A stretch of 64,000 nt of DNA from positions 140,830 through 204,829 of the IMG/VR virus record IMGVR_UViG_3300024502_000010; one strand, given 5' to 3'. Positions 3,217-28,219 of the stretch are shown piece after piece. The stretch's first letter is position 1; every line of letters starts with the position of its first letter. The notes beneath the pieces are model-generated. The model saw only the letters and a list, made by a program, of their open reading frames with translations. It searched no databases and was not told the DNA's origin. The position numbers and the translations under genes are program-made.

Positions 3217-4509
<1,293 letters not shown>

Positions 4510-6055: not shown

Positions 6056-6122
6056 TGTTAAGAATTACAACTGAATTCTTAAGTACTTATTTAGTATAGA
6101 GAGATTCTTAAATTTTGTCAAG
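6056..6122 (-). promoter_or_regulatory. Porin promoter with downstream palindrome
   Basis: TTGACA-17-TATACT overlapping late-type CTAAATA; TTAAGAATT-7-AATTCTTAA inverted repeat. Confidence 0.65.
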
Positions 6123-6933
6123 TGTTTTGCTGAGAAGTAGAATTTTCGGTTATTCTCCCCAGATATGGATCATAATCCATGTATTCTTCTATTTTAATTT
6201 TAGAACCATTTTGCTCCCAAAATTCGGAGAGTGCAGTGTGATTTCCTTTATGAAAAATATCAACATGTTCCGGATGAATAGATGATCCAAGTTCAATTCT
6301 ATAAAAGAGAAGAGGAATTGAATATGTATTTCCAGAATTATAAATCAAATCATCCGCAACTGGACGAGGTTTGACTCCATTATCCAGTTTATATTTTTCT
6401 CCACGGACATGGAACTTCAATAACTTTTCTGCATGATGTCTATTAATAAGATAGCAAGCTGTTGAAAAGTCATTAACAAATCTCTTATGCAATCTAACAT
6501 GCAAATCACCAGTACAAATGATTGCGATTTGAACTACATCCCAATCATATGGAATATGTGCATAAAAATCTGACCAATTAAAATCCCAGTATTTCACCAA
6601 ATCAAGATTACAATCATCTTCCATGATGATTGCATATGGACTATCTGAGGTTTCATACCAATGCTTTATTGCCTTAAGGTGAGATGTAATACATCCAATC
6701 TCACCCGATGTCATATTTTCAGGATAGCGACCTATTATAATATCACTTAAGTCATCTTCACGACCATCGTATGCAGAGATGCGTGTATAATTTTCAACTT
6801 CCCAATATTTAAATTGGGACTCCATATATTCTCTCCTTTCTTGCTGTCCATCAAGATTAAGATAATAAATGGGTCCAATATTTTTTAGTTTGTATGCTGA
6901 TTTATTCTTATCCAATTTATTAAAATCCATCAC
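6118..6933 (-). CDS. Glycosyltransferase family 25
   Basis: YYLNLD..ERR, ISAYDG, GEIGC..SH, IMEDD. Confidence 0.85.
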   Translation of the reverse strand: MMDFNKLDKNKSAYKLKNIGPIYYLNLDGQQERREYMESQFKYWEVENYTRISAYDGREDDLSDIIIGRYPENMTSGEIGCITSHLKAIKHWYETSDSPYAIIMEDDCNLDLVKYWDFNWSDFYAHIPYDWDVVQIAIICTGDLHVRLHKRFVNDFSTACYLINRHHAEKLLKFHVRGEKYKLDNGVKPRPVADDLIYNSGNTYSIPLLFYRIELGSSIHPEHVDIFHKGNHTALSEFWEQNGSKIKIEEYMDYDPYLGRITENSTSQQNT

Positions 6934-8084
6934 AAATCAATCCAGTATACCTCTTCATTGGGAATTCCATCAACCACAACTCTATCTCCATATTTTGATT
7001 CTAGGAAATCTTTTACTTGACCAAGAATTGCTTGATTGTCAAGTACATATACTTTATAACCCTCATCGAGAAGGTCTAAGCAAAGACGATACTGCTGACT
7101 CTCGGTAAGGATATCAGTTCCTTCTTTATATGAAATGTAATGAAAAGCAAATGGAATTTTATTCTCGTTCTTTTTGATAAAGTAGGTTTTCAAAAACTTT
7201 GCGTGTTCATTATTAAAGTCATCAGTTGTTTTTCCAAGGTTATATTCTAAACCAAGTTTTTTTGCATAAGCAGCAAAAGAACGATTGTCTCTTGGTAAGC
7301 ACGGACCACCAAATCCATATCCATATTTCAGATATTTACTACCAACTCTTGTATCAGAACCGATTGCTTTAAGAACATGATCAATTTCTTCTTCAAGACC
7401 AGCAAGAGACATGACTTCGCCAACCATATTTGCATAACTAATCTTGGTAGTTAAGAAACAATTGACTGCAAGTTTAACTAACTCTGCAGCAGTCGTTGAC
7501 ATAAAATAAATTCTTGGTTCTGTTACTTGAATTCTATTATAAATTTCTTCAATGAATGGGCGATACTGACCTTCGGGTCCACCAACAAGGACCATATCTG
7601 CATTCTGCAGGTCCTTAATAATATTTCCCTGAGCAATAAACTCAGGATTATAGTAAACATCTACGCCATAAGCATTGAGTTGGGATTGAAAATTATCACA
7701 ATCACCCGGATTAGTTGTACATCCAACTACAAAACATTTACCTTTAACTTCAATCCCAAGGTCTGGAGCATTTTGAATATCATTGATAACACCCCAAACA
7801 GCACTAACATCATAACTTCCGTCAGGAAGAGATGGCGTCGCTACCAGAGTATAAAGAACATCACACTCTCGGATAACATCATAGTTTCCAGTTTTAAATG
7901 TAATATTCTTTGCTTCAGAAAGAAGTTGCTGAACTTCTGGTTCGTGAGTATCAATGGTTCTTTGTAGAAGACCATTTACATAGTCTTCTCTAACATCAGA
8001 GGCTACAACCTCATAACCTGCTTTTTCTAAAAGAAGGGCAAAGCAAATACCAAGTCTACCTGCCCCAATAACTCCTACTTTCAT
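6930..8084 (-). CDS. ugd: UDP-glucose/GDP-mannose 6-dehydrogenase
   Basis: GVIGAGRLG, YNPEF, AELVKLAVN, GYGFGGPCLPRD. Confidence 0.9.
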   Translation of the reverse strand: MKVGVIGAGRLGICFALLLEKAGYEVVASDVREDYVNGLLQRTIDTHEPEVQQLLSEAKNITFKTGNYDVIRECDVLYTLVATPSLPDGSYDVSAVWGVINDIQNAPDLGIEVKGKCFVVGCTTNPGDCDNFQSQLNAYGVDVYYNPEFIAQGNIIKDLQNADMVLVGGPEGQYRPFIEEIYNRIQVTEPRIYFMSTTAAELVKLAVNCFLTTKISYANMVGEVMSLAGLEEEIDHVLKAIGSDTRVGSKYLKYGYGFGGPCLPRDNRSFAAYAKKLGLEYNLGKTTDDFNNEHAKFLKTYFIKKNENKIPFAFHYISYKEGTDILTESQQYRLCLDLLDEGYKVYVLDNQAILGQVKDFLESKYGDRVVVDGIPNEEVYWIDL

Positions 8085-8854
8085 TTTAGTTTTGCTGTAA
8101 TAAGTAAATGCCAACCAAGATTTTTTTCAAGAACTCTAAACATTTCCGGAGGCATGGATTCAAACCAAGGTTGTCTCACATACTCACCATTCTTATAAGG
8201 TTCTATTTGATAGGGGAAGATATGATCCTGTTCAATTGATAGAACTTCATATCCATCCAACAAGTCTACCACATCTTGCTTAGTATATGTATTAGCGATT
8301 GGACAACCATACTGTGCTTCTGGTTGATCAAGACCAGACTCAATCATATAATTTTTCCAAGAGTCTTTTGCATAAAGCATAATCTTGAGAACACTATTCT
8401 CGTTCATATACTTTTTAATCTCAGAAATAATCTTTTCTGGGTGAGGACTATGATGAATTACCCCAAAAGAATAAACCAAATCATAAGTCTCTGCAGGGAC
8501 AAAGGTTGAAAGTTCTTCAGCGTTTCCAGAATAAAACTTTCCAGTCTGCTCAAATACTTCAAATCTTTGTTTAGCAAGTTCAAGACTTGATTCAGAAAGT
8601 TCTACTCCAGTATAATCTGCCCCATTAAGAGCAAAGTTCAAACCAACTGTAGCAAGACCACAACCAATCTCTAAAACTTTTTTACCTTCCCATTTGGAAA
8701 ATTCAGTGAAGTCAAGGATGTGAGGTTCAACAAAAAATTTCTTTCTTTCTACCTCATTAAAATATTCTTTAGTACCAACCTCTTTTGAAGAATGTCTGAC
8801 ATTGCAGGGACGATCATCCCAAAACTTTTTTACTTCGGTAATTGTTGCAGTCAT
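8081..8854 (-). CDS. Class I SAM-dependent methyltransferase
   Basis: VLEIGCG motif I, DLVYSFGVIHH. Confidence 0.9.
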   Translation of the reverse strand: MTATITEVKKFWDDRPCNVRHSSKEVGTKEYFNEVERKKFFVEPHILDFTEFSKWEGKKVLEIGCGLATVGLNFALNGADYTGVELSESSLELAKQRFEVFEQTGKFYSGNAEELSTFVPAETYDLVYSFGVIHHSPHPEKIISEIKKYMNENSVLKIMLYAKDSWKNYMIESGLDQPEAQYGCPIANTYTKQDVVDLLDGYEVLSIEQDHIFPYQIEPYKNGEYVRQPWFESMPPEMFRVLEKNLGWHLLITAKLK

Positions 8855-9735
8855 AATGGAATATTGAAATTATAGTCTACTTTAATTGTTGACGGATAAG
8901 TGAAACACCAAAAATTATCTCTCACATAGGTCAAATCAGTTCTCATAAATGAAGCAATATATGAAAAAGCACTGTTTGCCATAATAAAGCAATCTGAGTA
9001 TATCATATGATATAAGTCACTGATTGGATGTTCATCTATATGAAGTTTAACTTCAAACATTTCTGTTGTTAGATTTACAAATTCTTCAAATGAATTAGTA
9101 AATCCCTGAGAGTAAATATGAAGAACTGTCTTCTTATTATAATATTTTTGTTTCAACCTGTCAATCAGATTCAAATATCTAGAGAAATCTCTCTCATAAT
9201 TATAAAGTTCCCTTTCGGTTGAAGAGGCATCAACATCTTTTGGATTTTCCGTCCTTATATGTAGGGCAATATTTACCTCATCATTATTGAAATATTTTTC
9301 TCCACTAAATCGCAAATTATTCTTTGCCTCTTTTACTAACTCTTCAGTAAAAATTATATCAGAATTCTGCTCACAGAAACACATCATGGGCCAAGTTGCA
9401 CCATGCTGAGGAAGTTCAATTAAAATTTCTTTGTTAGTATTTCTATTTTCTGCAATAAAATTTACAAGATTTTGATCAAAAGAAAAACCTCTAATTATTT
9501 CATCTGGATTTTTTAACTTAGGAAAATTAAAAAACTCTTCAAATGATTTGGACCAAGATTCACTGTCACCAGTATAATCAGTATACTCAAAGTGAGACAG
9601 GTCTTTAACTCCTGAAAAAGAAAACTCAACTCCAAAAAATTTGGAAACAAAACTGAGCATAATGGGGTACATCATCATAGCACCCGCACCCTCAGTTTTA
9701 TTTCCGTTCATGTCCAACGATAAGTGTAAAGACAT
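8851..9735 (-). CDS. Divergent GT11-like (GT-B) glycosyltransferase
   Basis: IALHIRT and DLYHMIYSDCFIMANSAFS resemble GT11 motifs. Confidence 0.55.
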   Translation of the reverse strand: MSLHLSLDMNGNKTEGAGAMMMYPIMLSFVSKFFGVEFSFSGVKDLSHFEYTDYTGDSESWSKSFEEFFNFPKLKNPDEIIRGFSFDQNLVNFIAENRNTNKEILIELPQHGATWPMMCFCEQNSDIIFTEELVKEAKNNLRFSGEKYFNNDEVNIALHIRTENPKDVDASSTERELYNYERDFSRYLNLIDRLKQKYYNKKTVLHIYSQGFTNSFEEFVNLTTEMFEVKLHIDEHPISDLYHMIYSDCFIMANSAFSYIASFMRTDLTYVRDNFWCFTYPSTIKVDYNFNIPL

Positions 9736-9742
9736 ATAATAA

Positions 9743-10501
9743 TTACAGAGTAAAAGTTGGAATAGGAATCATTTTATGTTTGTTTTGAGTATTAAATCTT
9801 TGCAGAATCTTTACTGCACTGCCCGTCCCAAATTCCATTGCCTCTTCAAGTTCTGCGTAAGAAGCACCAATTTGAGATTCATCACTTCTACCATCTTCCC
9901 AAAGTCCATCAGTAGGAGGTGCAGAAATAATCCGTTCATCAACACCAAGATGTTCCCCCAACATCCAAACCTCAGTTTTATACAGGTCGGCAATAGGAGC
10001 AATATCTACTCCACCATCACCATACTTAGTATAGAATCCTACACCATAATCTTCAACCTTGTTCCCAGTACCAACTACAATACCACCAACACATCCAGCA
10101 ACTTGATACAAAGTAACCATACGAATGCGTGACTTTGTATTTGCATTTGCAAGATTATTCTTGGTAAACTCTCCTTCCCCTGTCCAGAAATCAAATGACT
10201 TCATAAGTTGATCGTATGTACCAGTCAAATCAATTCTAACTTTAGTTACATTATCATACTTATCTTCCAATACATTGGAATAAGAATCAGATAGTTCATC
10301 ATTTTTAAAAGATGAATGAAGAGGCATAGACAAAACATATGTTGGAAGTCCTGTCTCGGCACAGAGAGTAGAGACAACGGCAGAATCAATTCCACCAGAG
10401 ACTCCAACTACAAGAGATTTAATATTATTCTCAGAAGCATAATTTTGAATCCAAGAAACTATTTTATTTTTTAATTCTGAGTAATCATTAATACGGTTCA
10501 T
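9743..10501 (-). CDS. nadE: NH3-dependent NAD+ synthetase
   Basis: VGVSGGIDSAV, NTKSRIRM, GTGNKVE, GFYTKYGDGGVD, PIADLYKTEV, PPTDGLW. Confidence 0.95.
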   Translation of the reverse strand: MNRINDYSELKNKIVSWIQNYASENNIKSLVVGVSGGIDSAVVSTLCAETGLPTYVLSMPLHSSFKNDELSDSYSNVLEDKYDNVTKVRIDLTGTYDQLMKSFDFWTGEGEFTKNNLANANTKSRIRMVTLYQVAGCVGGIVVGTGNKVEDYGVGFYTKYGDGGVDIAPIADLYKTEVWMLGEHLGVDERIISAPPTDGLWEDGRSDESQIGASYAELEEAMEFGTGSAVKILQRFNTQNKHKMIPIPTFTL

Positions 10502-11355
10502 AACACAATCCAGTTTTCTACATAAAGGTCTTTAGTATCTTTATCGGCATAAGAAGGTCCAAACCAATTTTTAGGTGCAATGACCTTTTTATTTGGATTA
10601 GAAATTAACCAAGCACCCCACCAACTCATACTACTATTAGCAATAATAGCATGAGAACACAGAGACATCAAGCACAAATCGGAGTATGGAGTATAGGAAC
10701 CATCTGCATATTTTTCCTGTGGTTCAGAATGAAGAAAGCGATCACCAGAGAAAAACTCCTGTTCCTTTACCCATTCGGGAGAGTCGGAAAAAATAACAAC
10801 TGGTTGCTCATCATCAAACTCTGCTAATGCTTTTTCATAGTATTCAATTGTTTGTGGAGGATGTTGCGAAGAACACTGAGTATAACTCCACTTAAATCCA
10901 CGAGGGTCTGTAAGATTAGGATCACCTCTACGAACATGAAGCATAATCGGTTCTTGTCCTTCAAGGGAACTCATCATTTCTTTACATGGTCCAAGATGCT
11001 CATCGTGAAATGTAAAGTCTTTTCTAATTTCATCTGAAATATGTTTGAAATATTTTTCAGATTGAAAGAACCCGTGAATACTTACATCATTTGGGCAATT
11101 TTCAAAGAGTTCATCATCAAAGTGAAAGAACCTTTCCTGAACATATCCAAAATCATCTCTGACTGCTAAGTTTTCCTCCTTAACAGATTCTAACTTAAAA
11201 CACTGATGAAGACTGTAATTTTCAATACCGTTTCTGTTGAATGGGGGGATACACCAATTATATCCATGCTTGGCAGCAATACCTCTCACTGCTGCATATT
11301 CGAACATTTGATTTCCAAGTCTACCAAGATTTCCAATCTGATTAAATGCTAACAT
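10498..11355 (-). CDS. Alpha-1,2-fucosyltransferase family (GT11)
   Basis: GRLGNQMFEYA, GFFQSEKYF, HVRRGD, IIANSSMSWW. Confidence 0.92.
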   Translation of the reverse strand: MLAFNQIGNLGRLGNQMFEYAAVRGIAAKHGYNWCIPPFNRNGIENYSLHQCFKLESVKEENLAVRDDFGYVQERFFHFDDELFENCPNDVSIHGFFQSEKYFKHISDEIRKDFTFHDEHLGPCKEMMSSLEGQEPIMLHVRRGDPNLTDPRGFKWSYTQCSSQHPPQTIEYYEKALAEFDDEQPVVIFSDSPEWVKEQEFFSGDRFLHSEPQEKYADGSYTPYSDLCLMSLCSHAIIANSSMSWWGAWLISNPNKKVIAPKNWFGPSYADKDTKDLYVENWIVL

Positions 11356-12157
11356 ATTTTTTAAGATAATTTTGCTTAGAATAATATTCTTTTAATTGCT
11401 CTTTATTCATAGTTTGAATTTTTTCCCACTCTTGCATATTTGATTGCATATGTGGATTACTAAACCAAGAATTTTCCCCTCGACTATGTTCTAAGTGATA
11501 AACATAATCAGTAATCCTACCTACATTATAATCTAAAGTAGTAAACCTGTAAAATCTTTCTTTATCTTCTGGTGCATATGCTTTGAAATTTTCATTTTCC
11601 ATCCCACCATCAATGTAGACTTTACGATTAAAGAACTGAACCCAACCAAAGTCAGAAGTATGAAGATTAGAATTCTTATCGAGCACTTGATAATCTTTTG
11701 TTTCTAAAAATTCAGAGACAATCTCATCAGTTGCTCTAACCTGATACTGATGCATTCCTTGTCCATAAGGATAGATTACATCGTGAGTATGATGAAGAAT
11801 AGATTGATATGCTTCATGATATGAATCTAAAGGAAGCAAAACATCACAGTCATAATTTACAACGATTTCTGTTTTGGATTCGGCAATCATTTCATTCAGA
11901 ACTCTTTGACGATGAAATAGAGGATCATCACTCTTCTCAAAGATATGGTTCACATTTATTTCAACATCCAAAATATCCTTGAGAATGGGAAGAGCATCCT
12001 TTTGAAAAACTGATTCTGAATCTACTTCTTTGATGGTGATATTAGTATCAAAATTTTCCAGAAGAAACGCCGTTGTTGTAATAACATTACGCAACCTATC
12101 TTGAGATTCAATCCGAATAGGAATAATAAATGTTGCTTCCTTTAAATCAATTTTCAT
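11342..12157 (-). CDS. GT-A fold glycosyltransferase (GT2/GT7-like)
   Basis: FIIPIR, VNYDCD, GGMENENF..Y..ED, HLEH. Confidence 0.75.
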   Translation of the reverse strand: MKIDLKEATFIIPIRIESQDRLRNVITTTAFLLENFDTNITIKEVDSESVFQKDALPILKDILDVEINVNHIFEKSDDPLFHRQRVLNEMIAESKTEIVVNYDCDVLLPLDSYHEAYQSILHHTHDVIYPYGQGMHQYQVRATDEIVSEFLETKDYQVLDKNSNLHTSDFGWVQFFNRKVYIDGGMENENFKAYAPEDKERFYRFTTLDYNVGRITDYVYHLEHSRGENSWFSNPHMQSNMQEWEKIQTMNKEQLKEYYSKQNYLKKYVSI

Positions 12158-12902
12158 CTGGATACTTCCTGTTCATGCAAAAATCTCTATGCTTATCCTG
12201 TATATAATGATATTCTTTGGTATTGATTAACCACCCACCTTCCGGATGTTCAATTGCAGCATCATATTGAGAGGTTTGTTGACTACTAATTCTATCATCA
12301 TGATCTCTATTTGCAACTAATGTATCTTCAATAATATGAGGCATACCATTTTCCCACCTCATGCGATGATAAAATTCTGTGTCTAAAAATAGTTTCAAAT
12401 TTTCATCAAAGTGTTGTTTAGAAGTATTCAAAAAAGAGACAACTGTTGGACTACTTAAAAGATTTCTTCCCTCCAACATATAGTCAGACCACTTTGGAGT
12501 TTTGTAATCATAAAATTGTTTGCCATCTTTAGTTCCACAGAATCCACTAAATGCCCACTTACAATTAGTTTGTTTATATTCTTGGTCTATTATTTCAAGA
12601 GCAGAATCGTTCACAAAAATATCATCAGAGAACATAATCTTAATTATCTCTCCCTCACACTCATCTAAAGCAATATTAATATTTTCGCAGGGAACTTTTC
12701 CTTCATACCTCACATACTTAAACTCAAAGTCATCAGAGTATTCTTGACAGACATTCAAGATATTATCATTTTTACTCTGGTCAGAAACAACAATTTCCAA
12801 ATCAAGAAGAGTTTGCCTCTTAATGGAATCAAGCAGTTCTCTCATCCATATTGAACCATTTTCTCCACGGTCATGGGCAGGAATAGCAATAGAAAATCTC
12901 AT
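12147..12902 (-). CDS. Glycosyltransferase family 2
   Basis: FSIAIPAH, IVVSDQS, MFSDD, FDENL. Confidence 0.8.
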   Translation of the reverse strand: MRFSIAIPAHDRGENGSIWMRELLDSIKRQTLLDLEIVVSDQSKNDNILNVCQEYSDDFEFKYVRYEGKVPCENINIALDECEGEIIKIMFSDDIFVNDSALEIIDQEYKQTNCKWAFSGFCGTKDGKQFYDYKTPKWSDYMLEGRNLLSSPTVVSFLNTSKQHFDENLKLFLDTEFYHRMRWENGMPHIIEDTLVANRDHDDRISSQQTSQYDAAIEHPEGGWLINTKEYHYIQDKHRDFCMNRKYPDEN

Positions 12903-13702
12903 CAGATTCTCTCCCAACCATCAGGAACTAAATCTTTATCATCAACATCCGAACTTGGTCCAAACCAATTCTTGGGACAAATAACTTTTTCACTTTTAGC
13001 AAGCCAAGCACCCCACCAACTAAAAGTACTTGCAGCAATGATATGATATTGGCACATGGACATGAGGCACATATCATGAATATTATCACTTGATTCCGAA
13101 ATTAAAAATCTATCATCCTCAAACAAATTACTATTCTGACACCACTTTGGTTCATCGGAAAATACAATTACAGGAATATCTTGCGGAAGTTTAGAAAGTG
13201 CTTCAGCAAAATATTCATCTGTCTGAAGATAATGATAATCTTTTTTCTCCACTTGATCGGTTCTTCTTACATGCAAAGAAATTGCTTTACCTTCGGGAAC
13301 TACTTGATCGAATATTTCTTTGCAGGTATTCCAAACATCATCTCTCCAAGTAAAGTCTTGGCGAATTTCATTTTCAATGTGCCAGAAATATCTTTCGGAT
13401 TGAAAATATCCATAGAGATTAATATCATCAGGACATCTTTTCACAAGTTCTTTATCATATCCGAAAGAACTTTCTTGTTTGTATGGTGCTTTCAATAATC
13501 CAACATTTTTAAGTCCCGACATTTTAAATGCCATGAAAAGTTTATGTTGGTTTTCTTCATCATAAAACTCTTCATCGGTTCTTGGTCCATCAGGAATAAT
13601 AAAATCATATCCACGAGCAGCAGCGATACCCCTCGTTGATGCATATTGGAACATTTGATTCCCAAATCTCCCATTTTTACCTAAGTGATTATGTCCTATC
13701 AT
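12902..13702 (-). CDS. Alpha-1,2-fucosyltransferase family (GT11)
   Basis: GRFGNQMFQYA, GYFQSERYF, HVRRTD, STFSWW. Confidence 0.9.
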   Translation of the reverse strand: MIGHNHLGKNGRFGNQMFQYASTRGIAAARGYDFIIPDGPRTDEEFYDEENQHKLFMAFKMSGLKNVGLLKAPYKQESSFGYDKELVKRCPDDINLYGYFQSERYFWHIENEIRQDFTWRDDVWNTCKEIFDQVVPEGKAISLHVRRTDQVEKKDYHYLQTDEYFAEALSKLPQDIPVIVFSDEPKWCQNSNLFEDDRFLISESSDNIHDMCLMSMCQYHIIAASTFSWWGAWLAKSEKVICPKNWFGPSSDVDDKDLVPDGWERI

Positions 13703-14403
13703 TCTAATACAACTCCTGGAGGCAATCTATAATGAAATCCGAAGGGAGTGATCCCTTCACACTCAGGAACTCTTGCTTCCTGAGAAAATTTAACAGCAAC
13801 TTCAACCGGAGCAAACTTACATCCTTGCTCAACAAATATGTGTCTGTTGTGTACACATATGTTTCCGTCCTCATGATAGTTAACAACTCCAGGGGGCATC
13901 CAATAGAAATCACTATTGTTTACCTCCCAAGGAACTTCAACTTTATTTGGAACATTTAGAAGTTTTTTACTTCTCAAAGAAAATCCACCATTACCAACTC
14001 GATGATGATTTCCAAAAGGATCAATATAAGAATCCTCAACATATTCCCAAGGAGCGCCTATGTAATCATATTCCAACCAACTATCATCCCACTTTTCGGG
14101 GAACAAAACAAATCCATCTGGTTGAACTAACAAACAGTGAGATGTTTCTATATGTTCACAAATTTTATAAATTACATAATAATTATAATCGTTGTAATTA
14201 TTAACTTCTATTGTAGGTTCTTCTAAGATAATTCCATCATTTTCAAGTTGATCTTTATGTTTTTCTATTTGCTCTTTTGTTGTTACTAATTTAACAGCAC
14301 CATAATTAATACCACTCATACTTGTATATAAAGCACGAAGGGTTTTATCAATTTCTCCAGTAGTGTCTATAGTAAACAGAGTTACATCAGGAAGATTAAT
14401 CAT
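13699..14403 (-). CDS. DUF5672-like putative glycosyltransferase
   Basis: QPDGFV, YDYIGAPW, VGNGGFSLRSKK, ED, FGFH. Confidence 0.75.
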   Translation of the reverse strand: MINLPDVTLFTIDTTGEIDKTLRALYTSMSGINYGAVKLVTTKEQIEKHKDQLENDGIILEEPTIEVNNYNDYNYYVIYKICEHIETSHCLLVQPDGFVLFPEKWDDSWLEYDYIGAPWEYVEDSYIDPFGNHHRVGNGGFSLRSKKLLNVPNKVEVPWEVNNSDFYWMPPGVVNYHEDGNICVHNRHIFVEQGCKFAPVEVAVKFSQEARVPECEGITPFGFHYRLPPGVVLE

Positions 14404-14421
14404 ATATTATTTTTATTATTC

Positions 14422-14961
14422 TCAACCAATCCAGAAACCAATCAGAGCATCAAAATTATGAGCAGGTCCATGGGTTTTATCCAACTTAAATCCAAGTTCT
14501 TCATAATCAGATTCGTACCAAGAACTCAGATGAGATTCATGAATATTACCATACATCTCACCTTGCTCATAAACACCATTTGGAGTTTGGATTATAATAA
14601 GAGAAAAATATTCTTTTGCTTCTTCCAAAAGTTTTTTAGAAGCATCCATCTCCAGATGCTCTGGACCATCAGACCAATATAAAATATTTTTATCTTTCTC
14701 TTCTTTGTTTACATACTGAGCGAAATTTTCAACAGAATCACATACTACAGTAGCATTATATTCTTCCTTCGGAAATGCATTAGCATTAGGTTCAAAAATT
14801 TCAATAAGAGTTATATTACAATTCCTCTCTTTAAAGAAATCATACTGCCACATATGAGAATCTGGTCTCCATCCAACAGTATAAACATTAGTATTTTGCT
14901 TCACACTATTAGTCAACTCTCTGGAATACTCTTCACGCATTCCATCCAAATAAAAATCCAT
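14422..14961 (-). CDS. Hypothetical, possibly degenerate methyltransferase fold
   Basis: TLIEIFEPN, GPEHL, IIIQTPNG, HESHLSSW. Confidence 0.55.
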   Translation of the reverse strand: MDFYLDGMREEYSRELTNSVKQNTNVYTVGWRPDSHMWQYDFFKERNCNITLIEIFEPNANAFPKEEYNATVVCDSVENFAQYVNKEEKDKNILYWSDGPEHLEMDASKKLLEEAKEYFSLIIIQTPNGVYEQGEMYGNIHESHLSSWYESDYEELGFKLDKTHGPAHNFDALIGFWIG

Positions 14962-14962
14962 T

Positions 14963-16036
14963 CTATTTCTCCAATAATCTTTGCAGTTTATTTATTTTTA
15001 CTAAAGCACCTTCGGACATATTAGTTCCGCGATTAGGAACTATAAAGTAATCCAATTCTATAGAGCTAGCAATATTATACAATGTATACATGCAATCTGT
15101 AAACACATACTCTATAAATTTTGTACCTTTAGGGCAGAATATTATATTATAATTTGCTCCGCCATGGCACCCAACTACAGTATGTGCATTTTTAAAAATA
15201 TCAAATGTTTCTTCAATCGTATAATTTGTGTCAATATAATCTATAAAATTCAAATCGTTTTTCTCTGCATATTGTTTCAAGTAATCAACAGTTTCTTCTT
15301 CATTAATAAAAATTCTTGAGGTTGCTGTTTTGTTTCTGTTCAGATAAATTAAATTTTTATTTTCAAATTTCTCATCTCTCAATATAAACTCATTAGCCTC
15401 TTGATAGAAAAAGTTATTCCACCAATAACAAGGCATATGATTATTACAATCAAGTAGATATAACTTGTTTGCTCTTGCTAAAATTTCAGCATACCTAAAT
15501 GGAGTATAATTTGGAACATAATATACTGGGTTTTTTAAATTTAATTTATTGAGAAAAAAGTCAGATATAGATTTCTTATTAACACCTTCATATAATAAAA
15601 TTGTTACATCAGGATTCTGTTCAAGAAATTCTCTTGCAAATGCGATAATGGGTAGAGCATCTTGAACAAAGTGTTGCCATATATAACCACCATAATTTAG
15701 AGCAGAGAATACTCGGTCAAACTCTAAGTCAACATATGATGGTTCTATATTTAAAGCTTCTACCCTACTTCCCTCACAATAATAAGTAAAGTTTTCAATA
15801 CCTATCATTCTAAAGTAGGAATTATCATATTCTTTCAATAAAAATTCATTAAATGGTAGTTTAAACTCTTCACCATCCCACAACTTGGGATAGTTTATTT
15901 CCCTCTCGCCCAAGAAAATCATTCCCGTACTCTTAGCATCACTAAGAGAAACTACATCTTCATCACTATCAACCTTGATTGGATATGAATAGTGCTTCTC
16001 TTTCTCGCTTAATACTTTTTCTTTAATGATTTTCAT
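14963..16036 (-). CDS. Glycosyltransferase family 61 (DUF563)
   Basis: YIWQHF..D, IYLNR...RIFINE, VVGCHGGANYNIIFC...IE. Confidence 0.8.
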   Translation of the reverse strand: MKIIKEKVLSEKEKHYSYPIKVDSDEDVVSLSDAKSTGMIFLGEREINYPKLWDGEEFKLPFNEFLLKEYDNSYFRMIGIENFTYYCEGSRVEALNIEPSYVDLEFDRVFSALNYGGYIWQHFVQDALPIIAFAREFLEQNPDVTILLYEGVNKKSISDFFLNKLNLKNPVYYVPNYTPFRYAEILARANKLYLLDCNNHMPCYWWNNFFYQEANEFILRDEKFENKNLIYLNRNKTATSRIFINEEETVDYLKQYAEKNDLNFIDYIDTNYTIEETFDIFKNAHTVVGCHGGANYNIIFCPKGTKFIEYVFTDCMYTLYNIASSIELDYFIVPNRGTNMSEGALVKINKLQRLLEK

Positions 16037-16039
16037 AGA

Positions 16040-16984
16040 TTATTTCACGTAATAATTATCCCGCTCTTCCTTACACACACTACCCGGATATAAATCTCCA
16101 TCAGTATCCAACCATAACCATCTTTCATCATTTACGATTCCATCTTCAGGTCTCCACCAACCATTAGAGCGAGACCAATCAAACCAATACTTAGGTGCAA
16201 TTACATTAATAAGTTCATTATTAGTCCAAACTGGCCAAAATGCAAAAGTAGATGCTGAAATAATAGCATACTTAGCAGTATTCAAAATACTATAATCAAT
16301 AGATACTGGACCACCAGGATAAATATACCAACTGATATTCTTTTGGTAAGGATCCTTTTCTTCAGAAATTGCAGATCCAACAATCTTAACACCAGGAACT
16401 AATTGACCAGCAAACTCTGGGTCATCAGTAATGATTACAAACTCAATATCTGGATTATTTTCTTTCATATGCTTCATAGCAAATCGATAATACTCAGCAG
16501 GTAGTACCGAATGCCCAGTTTTGTAGTCACCACCCCTAATTTGAATTACACAGATATTTTCCGAAGAATAGTCCCGGACTTTATATTTGTCGTCATAAGA
16601 TAACCAGTCACATATTTTATCTCGATAATCTTCAATATAAGACATCCTCTGGAAGTTACCATTAATATAAGTATTATCCTTTACTGTAAAGAAATTTTTA
16701 TCTGCTGCTCCAATTTCTCCAGGAGCAGTTTTATGATGGATGCTTTCTTCTTCATAATAATGTAAGATACCATCGGGAAGTTCTCTACAGTCATAAAAAT
16801 CAGATGCTTGTTCTACATTAAGAGAGATATCTTTTCCAAAATCAAAATTTAAAAATGGACCTCTCCAACCGGGTGAACTAATCGCATAATCATAACCCAA
16901 ACGATCAGCAAAGACACGACAACAAACCGCTCTCCAGATTTGGTTTCCCAAACCCGCGTGTTCATGAATACTTACTGCTAACAT
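16040..16984 (-). CDS. GT11-like glycosyltransferase
   Basis: AGLGNQIW, GNFQ, QIRGGDY, ASTFAFWP. Confidence 0.8.
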   Translation of the reverse strand: MLAVSIHEHAGLGNQIWRAVCCRVFADRLGYDYAISSPGWRGPFLNFDFGKDISLNVEQASDFYDCRELPDGILHYYEEESIHHKTAPGEIGAADKNFFTVKDNTYINGNFQRMSYIEDYRDKICDWLSYDDKYKVRDYSSENICVIQIRGGDYKTGHSVLPAEYYRFAMKHMKENNPDIEFVIITDDPEFAGQLVPGVKIVGSAISEEKDPYQKNISWYIYPGGPVSIDYSILNTAKYAIISASTFAFWPVWTNNELINVIAPKYWFDWSRSNGWWRPEDGIVNDERWLWLDTDGDLYPGSVCKEERDNYYVK

Positions 16985-16986
16985 AA

Positions 16987-17583
16987 TTATCTCCGATGAT
17001 ATTTGTTACTGTATTTTTTTCTCAAAATAGTAAGACCATTATTCCAAGGAAGTGTTGACCATTCCCAGAATTGTGGGTCAAGTTCTGCTACTGCTCTATA
17101 TGGACCACCACCAGCCCATTGACCATCTTTAAGTGTAAGATCAGAATGGTAGAATGGGTCAGTGCTTCCATACATCAAATCGTGCAAAAGAATAACACTT
17201 GTTGGACCAACTAATTCATCAAGAAGTTCTAACTGCTTTTTAACATGAGGATATGAATGCCAGTCATCGACATAAACAACATCTATTTTTTTATCCTTAG
17301 GCCAATCTTCAAGGAACTTGATACTATCTCCTTGATGAAATGTATAGTTGCCATTATTTGGTTTAAATTCTGACGGTGGATTAAGATCAACAGACCACAG
17401 ATGTCCGTTATTTAACTTTGCTGCTTCATATAAAGGTTCTGTGGTATGTCCTTCCCTAACACCAAGTTCAACATATGTAGAACCTTTAGATGCCAAAGCG
17501 ATTGAAAAAATTGTAATAATATGCCTATCAGAATCTAGGTTTCCGTTTAAAGCTTTATTACAAAAATCAGTTAGATACTTCAT
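16987..17583 (-). CDS. SAM-dependent methyltransferase (Methyltransf_24-like)
   Basis: YVELGVREG, GDSIKF, VYVDDWHSY, LLHD. Confidence 0.85.
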   Translation of the reverse strand: MKYLTDFCNKALNGNLDSDRHIITIFSIALASKGSTYVELGVREGHTTEPLYEAAKLNNGHLWSVDLNPPSEFKPNNGNYTFHQGDSIKFLEDWPKDKKIDVVYVDDWHSYPHVKKQLELLDELVGPTSVILLHDLMYGSTDPFYHSDLTLKDGQWAGGGPYRAVAELDPQFWEWSTLPWNNGLTILRKKYSNKYHRR

Positions 17584-18516
17584 TTAATTCGTGTACTTAT
17601 TTACGATATTATCAAAAAATTTTGGAAGTGTCAATCCAGACAAATCCATTTTTTGAGCTTTTTGGAATAAATGATCGTTTTCTATTAATAGATTTTCATT
17701 TACTTCGGAGTATTTATCCACAAAAAGAACAGGGTAATCTGCAAATAAAGTTTCCAAATAAAGATGCCTCTTCATAATTGGAACTCTTCTCATATAAAGA
17801 ACTTCCCAATTACGATGACAATCAATAGCATTTCCTCTTGGGCATATCATAAATTTTGATTGACTAAGATTATAAAGAAACACAGAAAAAGAAACTCTAT
17901 TTTCATGTACCACTGCCCAAGATTTATTCCTGAACATTTCTTTTATTCCCTTCCTTTCTTCATTGGAAGATTCGTTGTGACTCACATATAAAAGTCCGGG
18001 AGGATTATTTGGAAGATTTTTTGAAGCGCCTTTAATTTCAGATACTCTCATATCATTAGGATTCATTGCTCTCTGCAGTCCATAAGGAGCTGGGATAACT
18101 TTTCCACCATTAGCAATAGCATTTACTGCAGAAATGCACAAAACATTATTGGGTATCAAGTCAAAGATATAATCATCAATGGGAGTATCCTCAAGATTTG
18201 TGAAAATAATAAAATTCATTTCAGGAAAATTTGAGCAAAGATTTAATAAATCACTCCTTTCCATTAATGAATTGACATATGGTCTATCAGAATCACTAAC
18301 CTCAACAATATGTCTTTTATATAAACGAATATTATCAATAAACAGAGTCATATAATCTCTGCTTTTTTTAATCTCAAATAATCTATTAACGAATTCAAGA
18401 TTCAATAAATTAGCATCTTTCATAAATGATGTAAAAATATTCCCCCATTGACCAGACTGGTCTCCGAAAGAATAATCACATAGTTTTGAAAGTGCTACAC
18501 CTTCAATCAATTCCAT
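17584..18516 (-). CDS. Exostosin (GT47)-like glycosyltransferase
   Basis: SKFMICPRGNAIDCHRNWEVLYMRRVPI. Confidence 0.75.
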   Translation of the reverse strand: MELIEGVALSKLCDYSFGDQSGQWGNIFTSFMKDANLLNLEFVNRLFEIKKSRDYMTLFIDNIRLYKRHIVEVSDSDRPYVNSLMERSDLLNLCSNFPEMNFIIFTNLEDTPIDDYIFDLIPNNVLCISAVNAIANGGKVIPAPYGLQRAMNPNDMRVSEIKGASKNLPNNPPGLLYVSHNESSNEERKGIKEMFRNKSWAVVHENRVSFSVFLYNLSQSKFMICPRGNAIDCHRNWEVLYMRRVPIMKRHLYLETLFADYPVLFVDKYSEVNENLLIENDHLFQKAQKMDLSGLTLPKFFDNIVNKYTN

Positions 18517-19361
18517 GGCGTAATAAATTCTGAATATTTTTCTTGATTATCTACAATGTACTGTGGAAATGATTCATCTATAGGAACAGGAAAATAATTT
18601 ACACCTCTACCCAAAGGGTCTTTCTTTTCACTGACTATATCTTCGGCATTCACTATTATTGAAGGTTGAGCATCGGCACCTGCGACCATTTTTTGTTTAT
18701 ATCTTTCCACACCACCAAAATAACTCCAATGCCATCCACCATCTTGAATTCGATAAGATTCATTCCACATACTATCTCTCAGTTTGTCTATAGAAAGATT
18801 TTTTATTTTTTTCCAAGTACAAATTCTTGAACCTCTCCAATTATCATGATAATGAGTATTAAGATTATAATAAAATGCTCTCTGCATTGCAACATATAAA
18901 TTATTAGGATTAAACCAATTTAGATTTTCTAAAATTAATGGATTTACAATTTCATCAGCATCACTTGTTATAACAATATCATCATCAGTCACTCCTGCTT
19001 TTTCAATCGAGACTGCAGTATAATTTCTTGCATACATATCCCTTTGATAGGGGAGAGGAATATCAATATATCTTTGTCCACAATTTGGATCAATGTCTTC
19101 ATATGCAGTATGAAATTTTTGTTTTTCTAAAAATGCAGTAAAATCCACAGGGATTTCATCCATTACATCATGAATAACCTTATCGTTAAATTTGGAAAAA
19201 CGTTCTTTGTTCTCCAAATAATAAAGAGGTTTTTCATCACCCATAGTAGTATATGGACATTCTGTTATAACAAAATAATCCACATAGTCATAAAGGAGAT
19301 TGAAACGTATTTCAAGTATCTCTAACTCATTAAAAAATCTAAAGGAATCAAATATTTTCAT
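18507..19361 (-). CDS. Glycosyltransferase family 17 (beta-1,4-GlcNAc transferase-like)
   Basis: FNELEILEIR...VDYFVITE, SDADEI, GWHWSY. Confidence 0.85.
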   Translation of the reverse strand: MKIFDSFRFFNELEILEIRFNLLYDYVDYFVITECPYTTMGDEKPLYYLENKERFSKFNDKVIHDVMDEIPVDFTAFLEKQKFHTAYEDIDPNCGQRYIDIPLPYQRDMYARNYTAVSIEKAGVTDDDIVITSDADEIVNPLILENLNWFNPNNLYVAMQRAFYYNLNTHYHDNWRGSRICTWKKIKNLSIDKLRDSMWNESYRIQDGGWHWSYFGGVERYKQKMVAGADAQPSIIVNAEDIVSEKKDPLGRGVNYFPVPIDESFPQYIVDNQEKYSEFITPWN

Positions 19362-20019
19362 AAATTTTTTCTCTGGACAAATAGGTTATCATTCTTTCAT
19401 TTGGACTATAATCTTTAATAGAATAAGAATAATCATTTTCATTATCGGAAAAAACCATATTACAAAAATCTCTTAAGGCAGCGGTTACTTGTCCCATATC
19501 ACAATCATCGATTAAGATATTTTCTATTCCCAATTTTCCACAATTTACCAAATCGGAAATAGCACATTCGTAACTATGTCCACCATCTACCCATGCCATA
19601 TCAAATGGAATGTCATCTGGGTTGTCAAAAGAAGTTAAAGTTTCTAAAGAATCTCCGGGAAAAAAAGTAATAAAATTTTCACCATAAAGTTCATTAATTG
19701 CATCAACACAAAGTTGACTTTCCTCATTAATACCAAAAGTATAAACTTTTACTTCAGGTATTTCTTTTTTAACAACGTAAGAATAAAATCCCTTAAAAGT
19801 TCCAATTTCCAAGATATACTTTGGTTGAATCTTTTGCAAATATTTTTTATGAAATTTTAATTGGTGAACCATATTTTCAGCTGTTCTCCAATTAAATAAT
19901 CCACCTTCACTATGATCAAACATTCCTTCCAATTTGGAAAGAAATTCATAATCATATTCCAGCAGTTCCGATTTAGATTCAAAATCTTGTTTTGTAATTT
20001 CGATAGTTCTAGTTGTCAT
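19348..20019 (-). CDS. SAM-dependent methyltransferase (Methyltransf_24-like)
   Basis: ILEIGTFKG, GDSLETL, WVDGGHSY, IDD. Confidence 0.85.
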   Translation of the reverse strand: MTTRTIEITKQDFESKSELLEYDYEFLSKLEGMFDHSEGGLFNWRTAENMVHQLKFHKKYLQKIQPKYILEIGTFKGFYSYVVKKEIPEVKVYTFGINEESQLCVDAINELYGENFITFFPGDSLETLTSFDNPDDIPFDMAWVDGGHSYECAISDLVNCGKLGIENILIDDCDMGQVTAALRDFCNMVFSDNENDYSYSIKDYSPNERMITYLSREKIYENI

Positions 20020-21012
20020 TTAATTTCTCCAATAATCGTAAATGTCTTTAGTAACTTCATATTCCATACTCTTCACTTTTCTATTCGGTTGCTTCATAGC
20101 CCAGATAAACATACTTTCAATTAGTTCTTCAAGTTTTGTTTCATCCCTGAATTCTAACATACTTTTTGCTTTTGTATGATCACAATATGCGTGCTTAACT
20201 TCATGTCTTGGTTCACCATGTTCAATAGGAACTTCATATCCATATTTCTTACCAATCTTCTGTACGGTTTCAGCAACCTCATTCAAAGTAAAATGTTTAT
20301 CGGCACCAATATTAAAAATTTCTCCATCATATTCTGTAAGAAGTTTATCAAATGGTTCCATATAATATTTGATATCGGAGAAAGCACGAGTCTGTTCCCC
20401 ATCACCATAAACAAGAATTGGTTGACCATTCAAAGTTTTGCGAATGAAAATACCAATCACATTTCGATAACGGTCCCAAATGTTTTGGTAAATTCCAAGA
20501 ACATTATGAGGACGAACAATATTGTATCGAAGTCCAAACTGTTCGTGAGCTAATTTTAAATCACACTCGACAGCATACTTAGCAATACCATATGGGTCAA
20601 TTGGTTGAGGACGCTTATCTTCAGTGAATGGTGGTTCTTGCTCACCATAGACTGCCATACTAGAGGTGAAAATCATTTTAGTATCGTGCTTGATACATTC
20701 ATTAATTAAATTGGCAGAACAAATAAGATTGTTTCTATAGTTATAGTTTCGAATAAAAGGTGATAGTCCTTCAGCAGCATATGCAGCAAAATGCAAAAGG
20801 ACATCTGGTTTATGTTCTTCGAACAATTCAACTACTTTTTTTCTCCTTTCAAGATCAAATTTTGCAAATGTAAAATTTTCTGCCTTTGGAAGAAACGCTT
20901 TATATCCACCAGAAAGATCATCAATACCTATTACCTTATGACCGTTCGCTAAAAGATGTCGAGTATAATTGGACCCAAGGAGTCCCGCGCATCCAGTAAC
21001 AAATATCTTCAT
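20020..21012 (-). CDS. NAD-dependent nucleotide-sugar epimerase/dehydratase
   Basis: TGCAGLLGS, SSMAVYG, YGIAK, RPHNVLG. Confidence 0.92.
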   Translation of the reverse strand: MKIFVTGCAGLLGSNYTRHLLANGHKVIGIDDLSGGYKAFLPKAENFTFAKFDLERRKKVVELFEEHKPDVLLHFAAYAAEGLSPFIRNYNYRNNLICSANLINECIKHDTKMIFTSSMAVYGEQEPPFTEDKRPQPIDPYGIAKYAVECDLKLAHEQFGLRYNIVRPHNVLGIYQNIWDRYRNVIGIFIRKTLNGQPILVYGDGEQTRAFSDIKYYMEPFDKLLTEYDGEIFNIGADKHFTLNEVAETVQKIGKKYGYEVPIEHGEPRHEVKHAYCDHTKAKSMLEFRDETKLEELIESMFIWAMKQPNRKVKSMEYEVTKDIYDYWRN

Positions 21013-23696: not shown

Positions 23697-23722
23697 AGAC
23701 CAATAAATTTCTCTTAGTATAT

Positions 23723-23760
23723 AGTATACAAAAAAAGAGGAGTTTATGCAACTCCTCTTA
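23723..23760 (-). terminator. Intrinsic terminator with overlapping sigma70-like promoter
   Basis: AGAGGAGTT-gcata-AACTCCTCT-TTTTTT; TTGCAT-17-TATACT. Confidence 0.7.
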
Positions 23761-23764
23761 TGTA

Positions 23765-23856
23765 ACTCAGGCTCGCCACTTGCCCTTTGACTGGAGGCAA
23801 GAAACCAGGCGGGAGAGAGTCCCATCCGCACCAATTGCCCTTGAGAGAGGCAATAA
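23765..23856 (-). ncRNA. wcaG-like structured RNA
   Basis: Multi-hairpin leader with two UGGYG motifs (UGGUG, UGGCG) directly upstream of a WcaG-family gene in a cyanophage; recognised from memory of the motif, no covariance search run. Confidence 0.65.
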
Positions 23857-25283: not shown

Positions 25284-25336
25284 TGTTTTGAATGTTGACC
25301 TTAGTATTATAAGGGTTTGACAGGTAATCTGTCAAG

Positions 25337-25409
25337 TGCTCCTTGCGTGGATCGAACACGCCTCAGGCGAATTATGAGTTCGCTGCATTCACCAGATTGC
25401 TAAAGGAGC
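25337..25409 (-). tRNA. tRNA with CAU anticodon, probably Ile2 (lysidine type)
   Basis: Cloverleaf, loop CT-CAT-AA; C4-G69 and C5-G68 pairs are TilS determinants. Confidence 0.8.
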
Positions 25410-25413
25410 AAGG

Positions 25414-28209: not shown

Positions 28210-28219
28210 AGTGGGAGGT

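What the first reader, a model, noticed from the sequence alone, without database searches (positions are those of the whole stretch)
9743..10501. Phage NAD synthetase, possibly part of an NAD-rebuilding route
Seen: complete single-domain NadE (SGGIDS P-loop, no glutaminase domain), translationally coupled to a GT11 gene; a NadM-like adenylyltransferase fold is encoded at 43992-45293. Known: NaMN adenylyltransferase plus NadE are the last two steps to NAD+; NAD-depleting defences (Thoeris, SIR2, TIR) are countered by phage NAD-reconstitution pathways that use other enzymes. Inference: a deamidated-route variant of NAD restoration.
Basis: partly seen in the sequence, partly recalled or inferred. 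Interest (0 to 1): 0.6.

Follow-up and report, generated by a model that had tools for sequence, protein, structure and literature searches.

The report
Cyanophage NAD synthetase tied to sugar dehydrogenase
The gene is an ordinary-looking ammonia-dependent NAD+ synthetase in a marine T4-like cyanophage, but it always sits next to a nucleotide-sugar dehydrogenase in the phage's sugar-coat gene island, not with NAD-salvage genes, so it looks like cofactor supply for glycan synthesis and not an anti-defence NAD-rebuilding route.

Summary
Window 9743-10501 (-) is a complete 252-aa single-domain NadE. It scores 179 bits on TIGR00552 (cut-off 63.65), carries the SGGIDS PP-loop, and overlaps the upstream GT11 gene by 4 nt (ATGA).

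- The 433-aa nucleotidyltransferase (43992-45293) is a near-core cyanomyovirus gene. It occurs in 567 phage records against about 12 marine T4-like records with this NadE clade. Its fold matches PPAT, NadD and NMNAT equally.
- Neither the 205-kb record nor a 100%-complete 284-kb sibling record has Nampt/PncB or PncA. The 205-kb record also lacks Nudix, Prs, PnuC and NadC.

What nadE is tied to is an NDP-sugar 6-dehydrogenase.
- 78 of 78 NadE-anchored and 51 of 51 dehydrogenase-anchored viral contigs with room show the pair.
- The pairing holds across two dehydrogenase types only 28% identical to each other.
- It is seen in 0 of 80 cellular relatives.

The enzyme itself looks canonical.
- 56 of 58 columns conserved in cellular relatives are kept. 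Where five of those genomes were checked, the relative is the sole NadE and NadD is present.
- The phage clade is sister to a SAR11 NadE clade.

Best reading: a true NaAD-to-NAD+ synthetase, working as one half of a phage sugar-oxidation module. A uronamide-forming role is a minor rival.

The parts
9743..10501 (-). nadE: 252-aa single-domain, ammonia-type NAD+ synthetase
   Evidence: TIGR00552 179 bits (cut-off 63.65); best solved relatives are 3fiu (E 1.2e-36) and 2e18 (E 1.7e-31).
10382..10399 (-). PP-loop ATP-pyrophosphatase motif SGGIDS (residues 35-40)
   Evidence: Invariant in alignment A1.
9773..9778 (-). C-terminal His242-Lys243 of the conserved HKxxPIP tail. It aligns with the HK(R) of Vibrio cholerae (3q4g) and 5wp0 NadE. 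By my memory of the Bacillus subtilis structures, this tail binds the NaAD diphosphate.
   Evidence: H and K are invariant in 56 cellular and 29 cyanophage sequences.
10498..11355 (-). GT11 (fucosyltransferase-family) gene immediately upstream; its stop overlaps the nadE start (ATGA)
8851..9735 (-). 294-aa protein with no Pfam, PHROG or NCBIfam match and a GT11-like predicted fold. It is an insert between nadE and the dehydrogenase, seen only in this lineage.
8081..8854 (-). SAM-dependent methyltransferase. The same gene sits between nadE and the dehydrogenase in a minority of related contigs.
6930..8114 (-). NDP-sugar 6-dehydrogenase (Ugd family, 'type A'), the conserved partner of nadE
   Evidence: (TIGR03026 201 bits, cut-off 189.8).
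6118..23834 (-). Glycan-biosynthesis island holding the nadE-dehydrogenase module. It encodes GT25, GT11 x2, GT2, GT61, GT17, a DUF5672 protein, an RXYLT1-like protein, 5 methyltransferases and 3 SDR epimerase/dehydratases.
43992..45293 (-). 433-aa HIGH-superfamily nucleotidyltransferase (cyanophage 'cytitidyltransferase', phrog_395). It was evaluated and found not linked to nadE.

Best explanation
The gene encodes a genuine ammonia-dependent NAD+ synthetase (NaAD + ATP + NH3 -> NAD+ + AMP + PPi). It is carried as an auxiliary metabolic gene by a marine T4-like cyanomyovirus. It is one half of a conserved phage-specific two-gene module, nadE -> (optional methyltransferase or GT) -> NDP-sugar 6-dehydrogenase, embedded in the phage's glycan-synthesis island.

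Shown: the enzyme family, the intact catalytic and substrate-site residues, the module linkage, and the absence of other NAD-salvage genes.

Inferred: the phage enzyme amidates NaAD made by the host's NadD. This raises or maintains NAD+ while the phage runs an NAD+-hungry sugar oxidation (2 NAD+ per uronic acid) and loads several newly made NAD-binding sugar enzymes.

It is not a self-contained NAD-reconstitution pathway. It is not functionally paired with the 433-aa nucleotidyltransferase.
For: Family:
- Pfam, TIGR00552 and PHROG scores are far above their cut-offs.
- All solved homologues are NadE.

Canonical site:
- 56 of 58 columns that are at least 85% conserved in 56 cellular relatives keep the same consensus in 29 cyanophage sequences. 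The two exceptions are G->S and L->I.
- Residues aligned to the B. anthracis/B. subtilis ATP and NaAD sites, including the C-terminal HK, are kept.

Cellular relatives:
- They are 45-55% identical. In 5 of 5 genomes checked the relative is the only full-length NadE, and NadD is also present, so these are housekeeping NaAD-type enzymes.
- The cyanophage clade is monophyletic and sister to a SAR11 clade that includes pelagiphage HTVC008M. There is no long stem branch.

Linkage:
- All 6 cultured-phage genomes whose loci were read (5 cyanophages and pelagiphage HTVC008M) have nadE next to, or one gene from, a Ugd-family gene.
- 78 of 78 IMG/VR nadE loci with room have it.
- 51 of 51 Ugd-anchored loci with room have nadE.
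- 0 of 80 cellular loci have it.
- Adjacency survives a swap between dehydrogenase types that are 28% identical, while the two NadE proteins are 69% identical sisters.

No other NAD genes were found. A field metatranscriptome paper lists cyanomyovirus 'NAD synthetase' among periodically expressed AMGs (PMC7238727).
Against: - NAD+ is recycled, not consumed, by the dehydrogenase. A strict two-way gene linkage is more typical of consecutive pathway steps than of cofactor supply.
- No activity, expression timing or NAD measurements exist for this clade.
- An ammonia-dependent enzyme seems an odd choice in nitrogen-poor hosts.
- My assignment of NaAD-contact residues rests partly on memory of the B. 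subtilis structures, and the key paper on NaMN versus NaAD specificity was not available.
- The best solved match, 3fiu, is (from memory) the Francisella NMN synthetase, so a NaMN preference is not excluded.
Confidence: 0.55

Rival explanations
1. General NAD+-boosting auxiliary gene. The NadE simply raises host NAD+ for phage replication at large, and its place beside the dehydrogenase is inherited gene order within a mobile island with no functional meaning.
For: The enzyme looks fully canonical. The cyanophage clade is monophyletic, so much of the synteny could be by descent. Reviews already list NAD synthetase as a cyanophage AMG.
Against: Linkage is perfect in both directions: 78 of 78 and 51 of 51. 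It persists while neighbours change, with GT11 present or absent upstream and a methyltransferase or GT inserted. It also persists across a swap between two dehydrogenase types only 28% identical. It is present in pelagiphage HTVC008M, whose NadE groups with SAR11 NadE in the tree, and absent in 80 cellular loci.
Confidence: 0.2
2. Neofunctionalised amidoligase. The NadE-like enzyme adenylates the carboxylate made by the adjacent NDP-sugar 6-dehydrogenase and amidates it, giving an NDP-uronamide for the phage-directed glycan.
For: An obligate dehydrogenase-nadE pairing is what consecutive steps look like. The chemistry (carboxylate adenylation, then NH3 attack) is the same. In one related phage-like contig, NadE sits with a DegT aminotransferase, an acetyltransferase, a GT2 and a dehydrogenase; that gene set resembles pathways for di-N-acetylated uronic acids, which are often amidated (the pathway comparison is my own knowledge). 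The papers my search turned up tie uronamide formation to other enzymes such as WbpS (AsnB-like, by my memory) and none to NadE, so this would be new.
Against: No remodelling of the substrate site: 56 of 58 conserved columns and the GF(Y/F)TK(Y/F)GDGG and HK motifs are identical to housekeeping NadE. There is no accelerated stem branch. TIGR00552 equivalog-domain score is nearly three times the cut-off. GT61 and an RXYLT1-like gene in the island hint that the uronate may be decarboxylated to xylose rather than kept; this is weak.
Confidence: 0.1
3. NadE plus the 433-aa nucleotidyltransferase form a deamidated-route NAD-restoration pathway that counters NAD-depleting defences (Thoeris, SIR2, TIR).
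For: The NTase has intact HxGH-like and ISxxxxR-like motifs and a fold shared with NadD and NMNAT. The Atlas auto-names its cluster 'NMN/NaMN adenylyltransferase family'. Other phages do cluster NadE with PncB or Nampt and NMNAT.
Against: The NTase is near-core in cyanomyoviruses, with or without NadE (567 against about 12 records). It lies 34 kb away in the replication module. Its fold is equally close to PPAT. No PncA, PncB or Nampt was found, even in a 100%-complete sibling genome. NadE cannot use nicotinamide or ADP-ribose. The published NARP1-3 pathways use other enzymes. The same module occurs in a SAR11 phage, whose hosts are known (my own knowledge) for very few defence systems.
Confidence: 0.1

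Closest known systems
Annotated 'NAD synthetase' genes of cultured marine T4-like phages (Synechococcus phages S-SSM7, S-SSM6a, Bellamy, Sf-FS3, S-SCSM2R; Prochlorococcus phage P-TIM68; Pelagibacter phage HTVC008M)
   Same: Same family and length, 47-64% identity. Same position in a glycosyltransferase island, directly or one gene upstream of a Ugd-family dehydrogenase.
   Different: The window has two genes (a GT11-like 294-aa protein and a methyltransferase) between nadE and the dehydrogenase. None of these homologues has been characterised, and I found no paper noting the pairing with the dehydrogenase.
Housekeeping single-domain NH3-dependent NadE of Flavobacteriia, SAR11, Neisseriaceae and MGII archaea
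   Same: 45-55% identity. Conserved columns are nearly all shared (56 of 58). Same C-terminal HKxxPIP tail.
   Different: The cellular genes are never next to a Ugd-family gene (0 of 80). Where five genomes were checked, the gene is the sole NadE, alongside NadD.
Francisella tularensis NadE* (PDB 3fiu), from memory an NMN synthetase that amidates NaMN
   Same: Best solved-structure match (E 1.2e-36). Short, roughly 250-aa form of the family.
   Different: At the positions I recall as determining NaMN preference in Francisella (Tyr27, Gln133), the phage has Asn25 and Gly136. Gly matches the B. anthracis NaAD-type enzyme. The Tyr32 equivalent is present in the phage and is Ser in Francisella. 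The source paper could not be read, so this is a lead only.
Phage NAD+ reconstitution pathways NARP1 (Adps + Namat), NARP2 (Nampt + Nmnat) and NARP3 (PnuC + NadR-like)
   Same: Phage-encoded NAD+ biosynthetic enzymes.
   Different: These start from the NADase products (ADP-ribose, nicotinamide) or from nicotinamide riboside. None uses NadE. None of their Pfam hallmarks searched was found in this genome.
NadE-containing NAD clusters of Xanthomonas phage X1 and Sinorhizobium phage Phosso
   Same: Phage NadE of the same Pfam family (31-34% identity).
   Different: There, NadE lies within a few genes of NMNAT and Nampt or PncB. Here it lies in a glycan island with a dehydrogenase and no salvage genes.

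Membership tests
NH3-dependent NAD+ synthetase (NadE; PF02540 / TIGR00552) | Profile match above the curated cut-offs over the full domain | tested here: met
   PF02540 163 bits (cut-off 21). TIGR00552 179.2 bits (cut-off 63.65). The full-length equivalog models NF010587 and NF001979 score below their cut-offs of about 250.
NH3-dependent NAD+ synthetase (NadE; PF02540 / TIGR00552) | PP-loop SGGxDS ATP-pyrophosphatase motif | tested here: met
   SGGIDS at residues 35-40; invariant in A1.
NH3-dependent NAD+ synthetase (NadE; PF02540 / TIGR00552) | Conserved ATP/Mg and NaAD-site residues, including the GFxTKxGDGG block and the C-terminal HK | tested here: met
   Alignment to 2pz8 and 3q4g. 56 of 58 conserved columns are shared with cellular NadE. 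Which residues contact NaAD is from my memory of the B. subtilis structures.
NH3-dependent NAD+ synthetase (NadE; PF02540 / TIGR00552) | Single synthetase domain without a fused or adjacent glutaminase (type N) | tested here: met
   252 aa, one domain. The neighbouring genes are GT and methyltransferase genes. The CN-hydrolase gene of Sf-FS3 has no homologue in the 80 related loci, four of which are 100% identical to the window over nadE and its neighbours.
NH3-dependent NAD+ synthetase (NadE; PF02540 / TIGR00552) | Catalyses NaAD + ATP + NH3 -> NAD+ | not testable with these tools
   Needs an enzyme assay or complementation.
NMN synthetase (Francisella NadE* type) | Substitutions that block the adenylyl part of NaAD, paired with a NadM-type NMNAT instead of NadD | tested here: inconclusive
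   The phage has Gly136 and Asn25 where I recall Gln133 and Tyr27 in Francisella. Cellular relatives have NadD. The source paper is not held.
Phage NAD+ reconstitution pathway (NARP1/2/3-like) | Enzymes that take up the NADase products or nicotinamide riboside: Adps (Prs-like) + Namat, Nampt + Nmnat, or PnuC + NadR | tested here: not met
   No PF04095, PF13793, PF04973 or PF00293 in the 205-kb record. No PF04095 or PF00857 in the complete 284-kb sibling.
Phage NAD+ reconstitution pathway (NARP1/2/3-like) | Pathway genes co-occur or cluster in the same phage genomes | tested here: not met
   NTase in 567 records against about 12 for the NadE clade, and 34 kb apart here. nadE clusters with the dehydrogenase instead.
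NMN/NaMN adenylyltransferase (NadD/NadM/NadR), for the 433-aa protein | Family-specific profile match, or a structural match better than to other HIGH nucleotidyltransferases | tested here: inconclusive
   CTP_transf_like 17.5-20 bits, below the cut-off. nadR NMNAT domain E 0.006, PPAT E 0.04. Foldseek ranks PPAT, NadD and NMNAT together at E 2e-5 to 5e-4 with 13-18% identity.

The most novel reading that the evidence does not exclude
The strict, phage-specific nadE-NDP-sugar dehydrogenase module reflects direct biochemical coupling rather than general cofactor supply. Either the NadE-family enzyme amidates the nascent NDP-uronate to a uronamide, which would be a new activity for the NadE family. 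Or the two proteins form a unit that makes NAD+ locally for the dehydrogenase.
Probability: 0.12. Interest if true: 0.7.

Novelty: new member of a known kind. Interest (0 to 1): 0.4.

Why it matters
Phage NadE genes are already annotated in several marine phages, so the gene itself is not news. The idea that it marks a new anti-defence NAD-rebuilding route does not hold here.

What is worth keeping is the rule found on the way. In marine T4-like phages nadE and an NDP-sugar 6-dehydrogenase travel as an inseparable pair inside the variable glycan island. This holds in both directions, across two dehydrogenase types and across hosts (cyanobacteria, SAR11). The cellular relatives are never arranged this way.

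That gives a concrete, cheap hypothesis to test about why a phage carries the last enzyme of NAD+ synthesis: cofactor supply for phage-directed sugar oxidation, or, less likely, uronamide formation. It also cautions against reading every phage NAD gene as counter-defence.

Tried and rejected
- The Sorci 2009 paper on Francisella NMN synthetase is not held. A search for its mutant names found nothing relevant. The NaMN versus NaAD specificity residues are therefore from memory only.
- Domain fusions among 150 representatives (NadE-CoaE, NadE + GIY-YIG, and others with no Pfam match) gave no clue to a sugar link.
- I checked whether the 294-aa gene next to nadE could be a glutaminase subunit. 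It has no family or phage match and a GT11-like fold, so no.
- The CN-hydrolase gene near nadE-ugd in Sf-FS3 has no homologue in the 80 related loci.
- A sequence search of the NTase against solved structures found nothing. The fold search could not separate PPAT, NadD and NMNAT. A scan for relatives of the Klebsiella phage K64-1 homologue gave one locus only.
- The three SDR enzymes could not be typed, so the fate of the uronic acid (kept, epimerised or decarboxylated to xylose) is open.
- One context look-up gave a 1.1-kb contig, too short to be informative.
- The word search returned only hits at least 73% identical. I therefore used the large representative search once, to obtain diverse relatives and fusions for the neofunctionalisation question.
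- I considered the uronamide hypothesis seriously and down-weighted it on residue conservation.
- I did not run complex prediction, because I make no binding claim. I did not use the reads tools.

Full report
**What the window is.** All long ORFs lie on the minus strand and there are 13 tRNA genes. The window encodes a family-B DNA polymerase, a RecA/UvsX-like protein, a DnaB/gp41-like helicase, NrdA/NrdB, and CobS-like and peptidase-like PHROGs typical of T4-like marine phages. It also encodes PstS, Gnd, MazG and Hsp20. The nearest records are Synechococcus and Prochlorococcus myoviruses. The window is bases 140830-204829 of a 204,829-bp virus record, estimated 78% complete. A sibling record of 284,050 bp, estimated 100% complete, carries an identical nadE locus.

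**The observation.** ORF 9743-10501 (-) is a complete 252-aa protein.
- It matches Pfam NAD_synthase (163 bits), TIGR00552 nadE (179 bits, cut-off 63.65) and phrog_11189 'NAD synthetase' (309 bits).
- Every solved relative is an NH3-dependent NAD+ synthetase. The best are 3fiu and 2e18.
- SGGIDS is at residues 35-40.
- The upstream GT11 gene ends inside ATGA, a 4-nt overlap with the nadE start.
- There is no glutaminase domain.

**Is the enzyme still a NadE in function?** The word search found thousands of marine metagenomic homologues, but the listed ones were at least 73% identical. I therefore ran the representative search once for diversity, and scanned one genome per prokaryote species with an alignment of diverse members.
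- The nearest cellular homologues are 45-55% identical. They come from Flavobacteriia, Pelagibacteraceae (SAR11), Poseidoniales archaea and Neisseriaceae.
- In five such genomes this gene is the only full-length NAD_synthase match. All five also have NadD above its cut-off. These are therefore housekeeping enzymes of the NaMN -> NaAD -> NAD+ route.
- In a FastTree tree of 189 sequences the cyanophage NadEs form one clade (support 98). It groups (support 82, unstarred) with a starred clade (97) that holds SAR11 NadE and pelagiphage HTVC008M. There is no long stem.
- Of 58 columns at least 85% conserved in 56 cellular sequences, 56 have the same consensus in 29 cyanophage sequences. The exceptions are G->S and L->I. 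Clade-specific changes are conservative: F->Y, S->A, V->T, Y->Q.
- Aligned to B. anthracis NadE (2pz8), the phage keeps the equivalents of B. subtilis Tyr32, Asn133, Arg137, Arg139, Tyr144, Thr157, Glu162, Phe167/168, Thr169, Asp173, Asp177, Lys186, Pro207-Thr208 and His257-Lys258. That these are the ATP and NaAD contacts is from my memory of the structures.

I conclude that the catalytic and substrate sites are not remodelled.

NaAD versus NaMN preference cannot be settled. At the positions I recall as Francisella-specific, the phage carries Asn25 (Thr in B. anthracis, Tyr27 in Francisella) and Gly136 (Gly in B. anthracis, Gln133 in Francisella). The source paper was not available.

**What the gene is linked to.** In the six cultured relatives whose loci I read, nadE lies in a glycosyltransferase island directly upstream of, or one gene from, a UDP-glucose/GDP-mannose dehydrogenase family gene.

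| Survey | Result |
|---|---|
| 80 IMG/VR loci fetched with NadE | 78 have such a gene on the same strand just downstream; the other two end before it could appear |
| 55 loci fetched with the window's dehydrogenase | 51 of 51 with enough upstream sequence have nadE |
| 80 cellular loci, within 8 kb either side | 0 have one |

In the NadE-anchored loci the spacing is usually 0 bp. In a minority, one methyltransferase lies between.

The partner comes in two types. Type A is found in the window, S-SSM7 and P-TIM68. Type B is found in Bellamy and HTVC008M. The two type B proteins are 53% identical to each other but only 28% identical to type A. Bellamy and P-TIM68 have sister NadEs (69% identical) next to different dehydrogenase types. 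A 642-kb uncultured phage and a related phage-like contig also carry the pair, adjacent or within the same sugar cluster.

In the window the order is GT11 - nadE - GT11-like 294-aa protein - methyltransferase - dehydrogenase - GT25. This sits within an island from about 6118 to 23834 with further GTs, methyltransferases and three SDR enzymes.

**The proposed partner NTase.** The 433-aa protein (43992-45293) has four parts: a short N-terminal domain, a Pro/Gln/Ala-rich linker, a HIGH-type nucleotidyltransferase core, and a small C-terminal beta domain.
- The core carries GRFNPPTVGH and GMSASKMRK, plus family-invariant SQD..KNPL and GSDR motifs.
- It is the 'cytitidyltransferase' of cyanophage annotations (phrog_395). 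It is present in 567 phage records, about 463 of them cyanophage, and also in some jumbo phages.
- The NadE clade is in about a dozen marine T4-like records, so the two genes do not co-vary.
- Family scans are below the cut-offs and ambiguous.
- The AlphaFold model (mean pLDDT 79) matches PPAT, NadD and archaeal NMNAT equally, at 13-18% identity.
- An automatic Atlas cluster name calls it an NMN/NaMN adenylyltransferase family. That is a lead, not a test.

**Other NAD genes.** The 205-kb record has no NAPRTase/Nampt, isochorismatase/PncA, Nudix, Prs-N, PnuC or QRPTase family match. The complete sibling has no NAPRTase/Nampt and no PncA.

Other phages do cluster NadE with salvage genes. Xanthomonas phage X1 has NadE near NMNAT and Nampt. 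Sinorhizobium phage Phosso has NadE next to PncB, a MutT-like hydrolase and NMNAT. That is what a NadE-containing NAD route looks like in a phage genome, and the window does not look like it.

The published NARP1-3 pathways use other enzymes and do not mention NadE in the texts I searched.

**Mechanism.**
- Shown: the family, the intact sites, the module, and the absence of salvage genes.
- Inferred: the phage enzyme converts host-made NaAD to NAD+ and supports the adjacent NAD+-dependent sugar oxidation and the island's other NAD-binding enzymes.
- Weak point: NAD+ is recycled, so a strict linkage is not obviously needed.

The main alternative is that the enzyme amidates the uronate product. 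It fits the linkage well but conflicts with the unchanged site, so I give it about 0.1.

**Novelty.** NAD synthetase is already annotated in these phages and listed among cyanophage AMGs, so the gene is a new member of a known kind. I found no paper noting the nadE-dehydrogenase pairing. That pairing is the useful by-product of this check.

Noticed in passing
window 3217-4470 (-): Full-length S-adenosyl-L-homocysteine hydrolase (AdoHcyase plus its NAD-binding domain). It lies just outside an island with at least five methyltransferases. It may serve to clear SAH, and it is another NAD-binding enzyme.
   Followed up: no
window 4529-6025 (-): 498-aa protein with an SLH domain and an OprB-family carbohydrate porin domain, that is, a cyanobacterial-type outer-membrane porin encoded by the phage. 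PstS follows at 2184-3146.
   Followed up: no
window 25336-30603 and 46058-46129: 13 tRNA genes, 12 of them in one 5-kb stretch interspersed with an HNH endonuclease ORF (28973-29509) and a ferritin/Dps-like ORF (28487-28948). The listed ORFs 29535-29855 and 30223-30507 overlap tRNA genes and are probably not genes.
   Followed up: no
window 34211-34666 (-): SegE-like GIY-YIG homing endonuclease (178 bits) just downstream of nrdB. One NadE representative (P0275) is also fused to or followed by a GIY-YIG domain.
   Followed up: no
window 43992-45293 (-); L170 1450-3240: The cyanophage NTase core is highly conserved (86-93% identity over many contigs) behind a variable Pro/Gln/Ala-rich linker. 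In pelagiphage HTVC008M the same core is the N-terminus of a 596-aa protein. One record (RB11-B) annotates the homologue as a tail fiber protein. The function of this near-core gene is unknown and may deserve its own study.
   Followed up: partly
L308 (Xanthomonas phage X1) and L309 (Sinorhizobium phage Phosso): These phages cluster NadE with NMNAT and Nampt or PncB (plus a MutT-like hydrolase). This would be a deamidated or mixed NAD route including NadE that the NARP papers I searched do not mention.
   Followed up: partly
L006 8773-9633 (Synechococcus phage Sf-FS3): A CN-hydrolase (nitrilase-like) gene lies two genes downstream of nadE-ugd. It could be a stand-alone glutaminase subunit, as in the Thermus two-subunit NAD synthetase (PMC3376133). 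No homologue was found in the 80 IMG/VR loci.
   Followed up: partly
L004 650-1084 (Prochlorococcus phage P-TIM68 gp170): A 144-aa ORF beside nrdB/ndhP is also annotated 'NAD synthetase'. It is far too short to be a NadE, which may inflate counts such as '24/153 cyanophages' in reviews (PMC10452541).
   Followed up: no
contig of P0248: A phage-like contig in which a 52%-identical NadE is followed by a DegT aminotransferase, an acetyltransferase, GT2, a DNA methylase and then a Ugd-family dehydrogenase. This is a looser form of the same module with amino-sugar enzymes.
   Followed up: no
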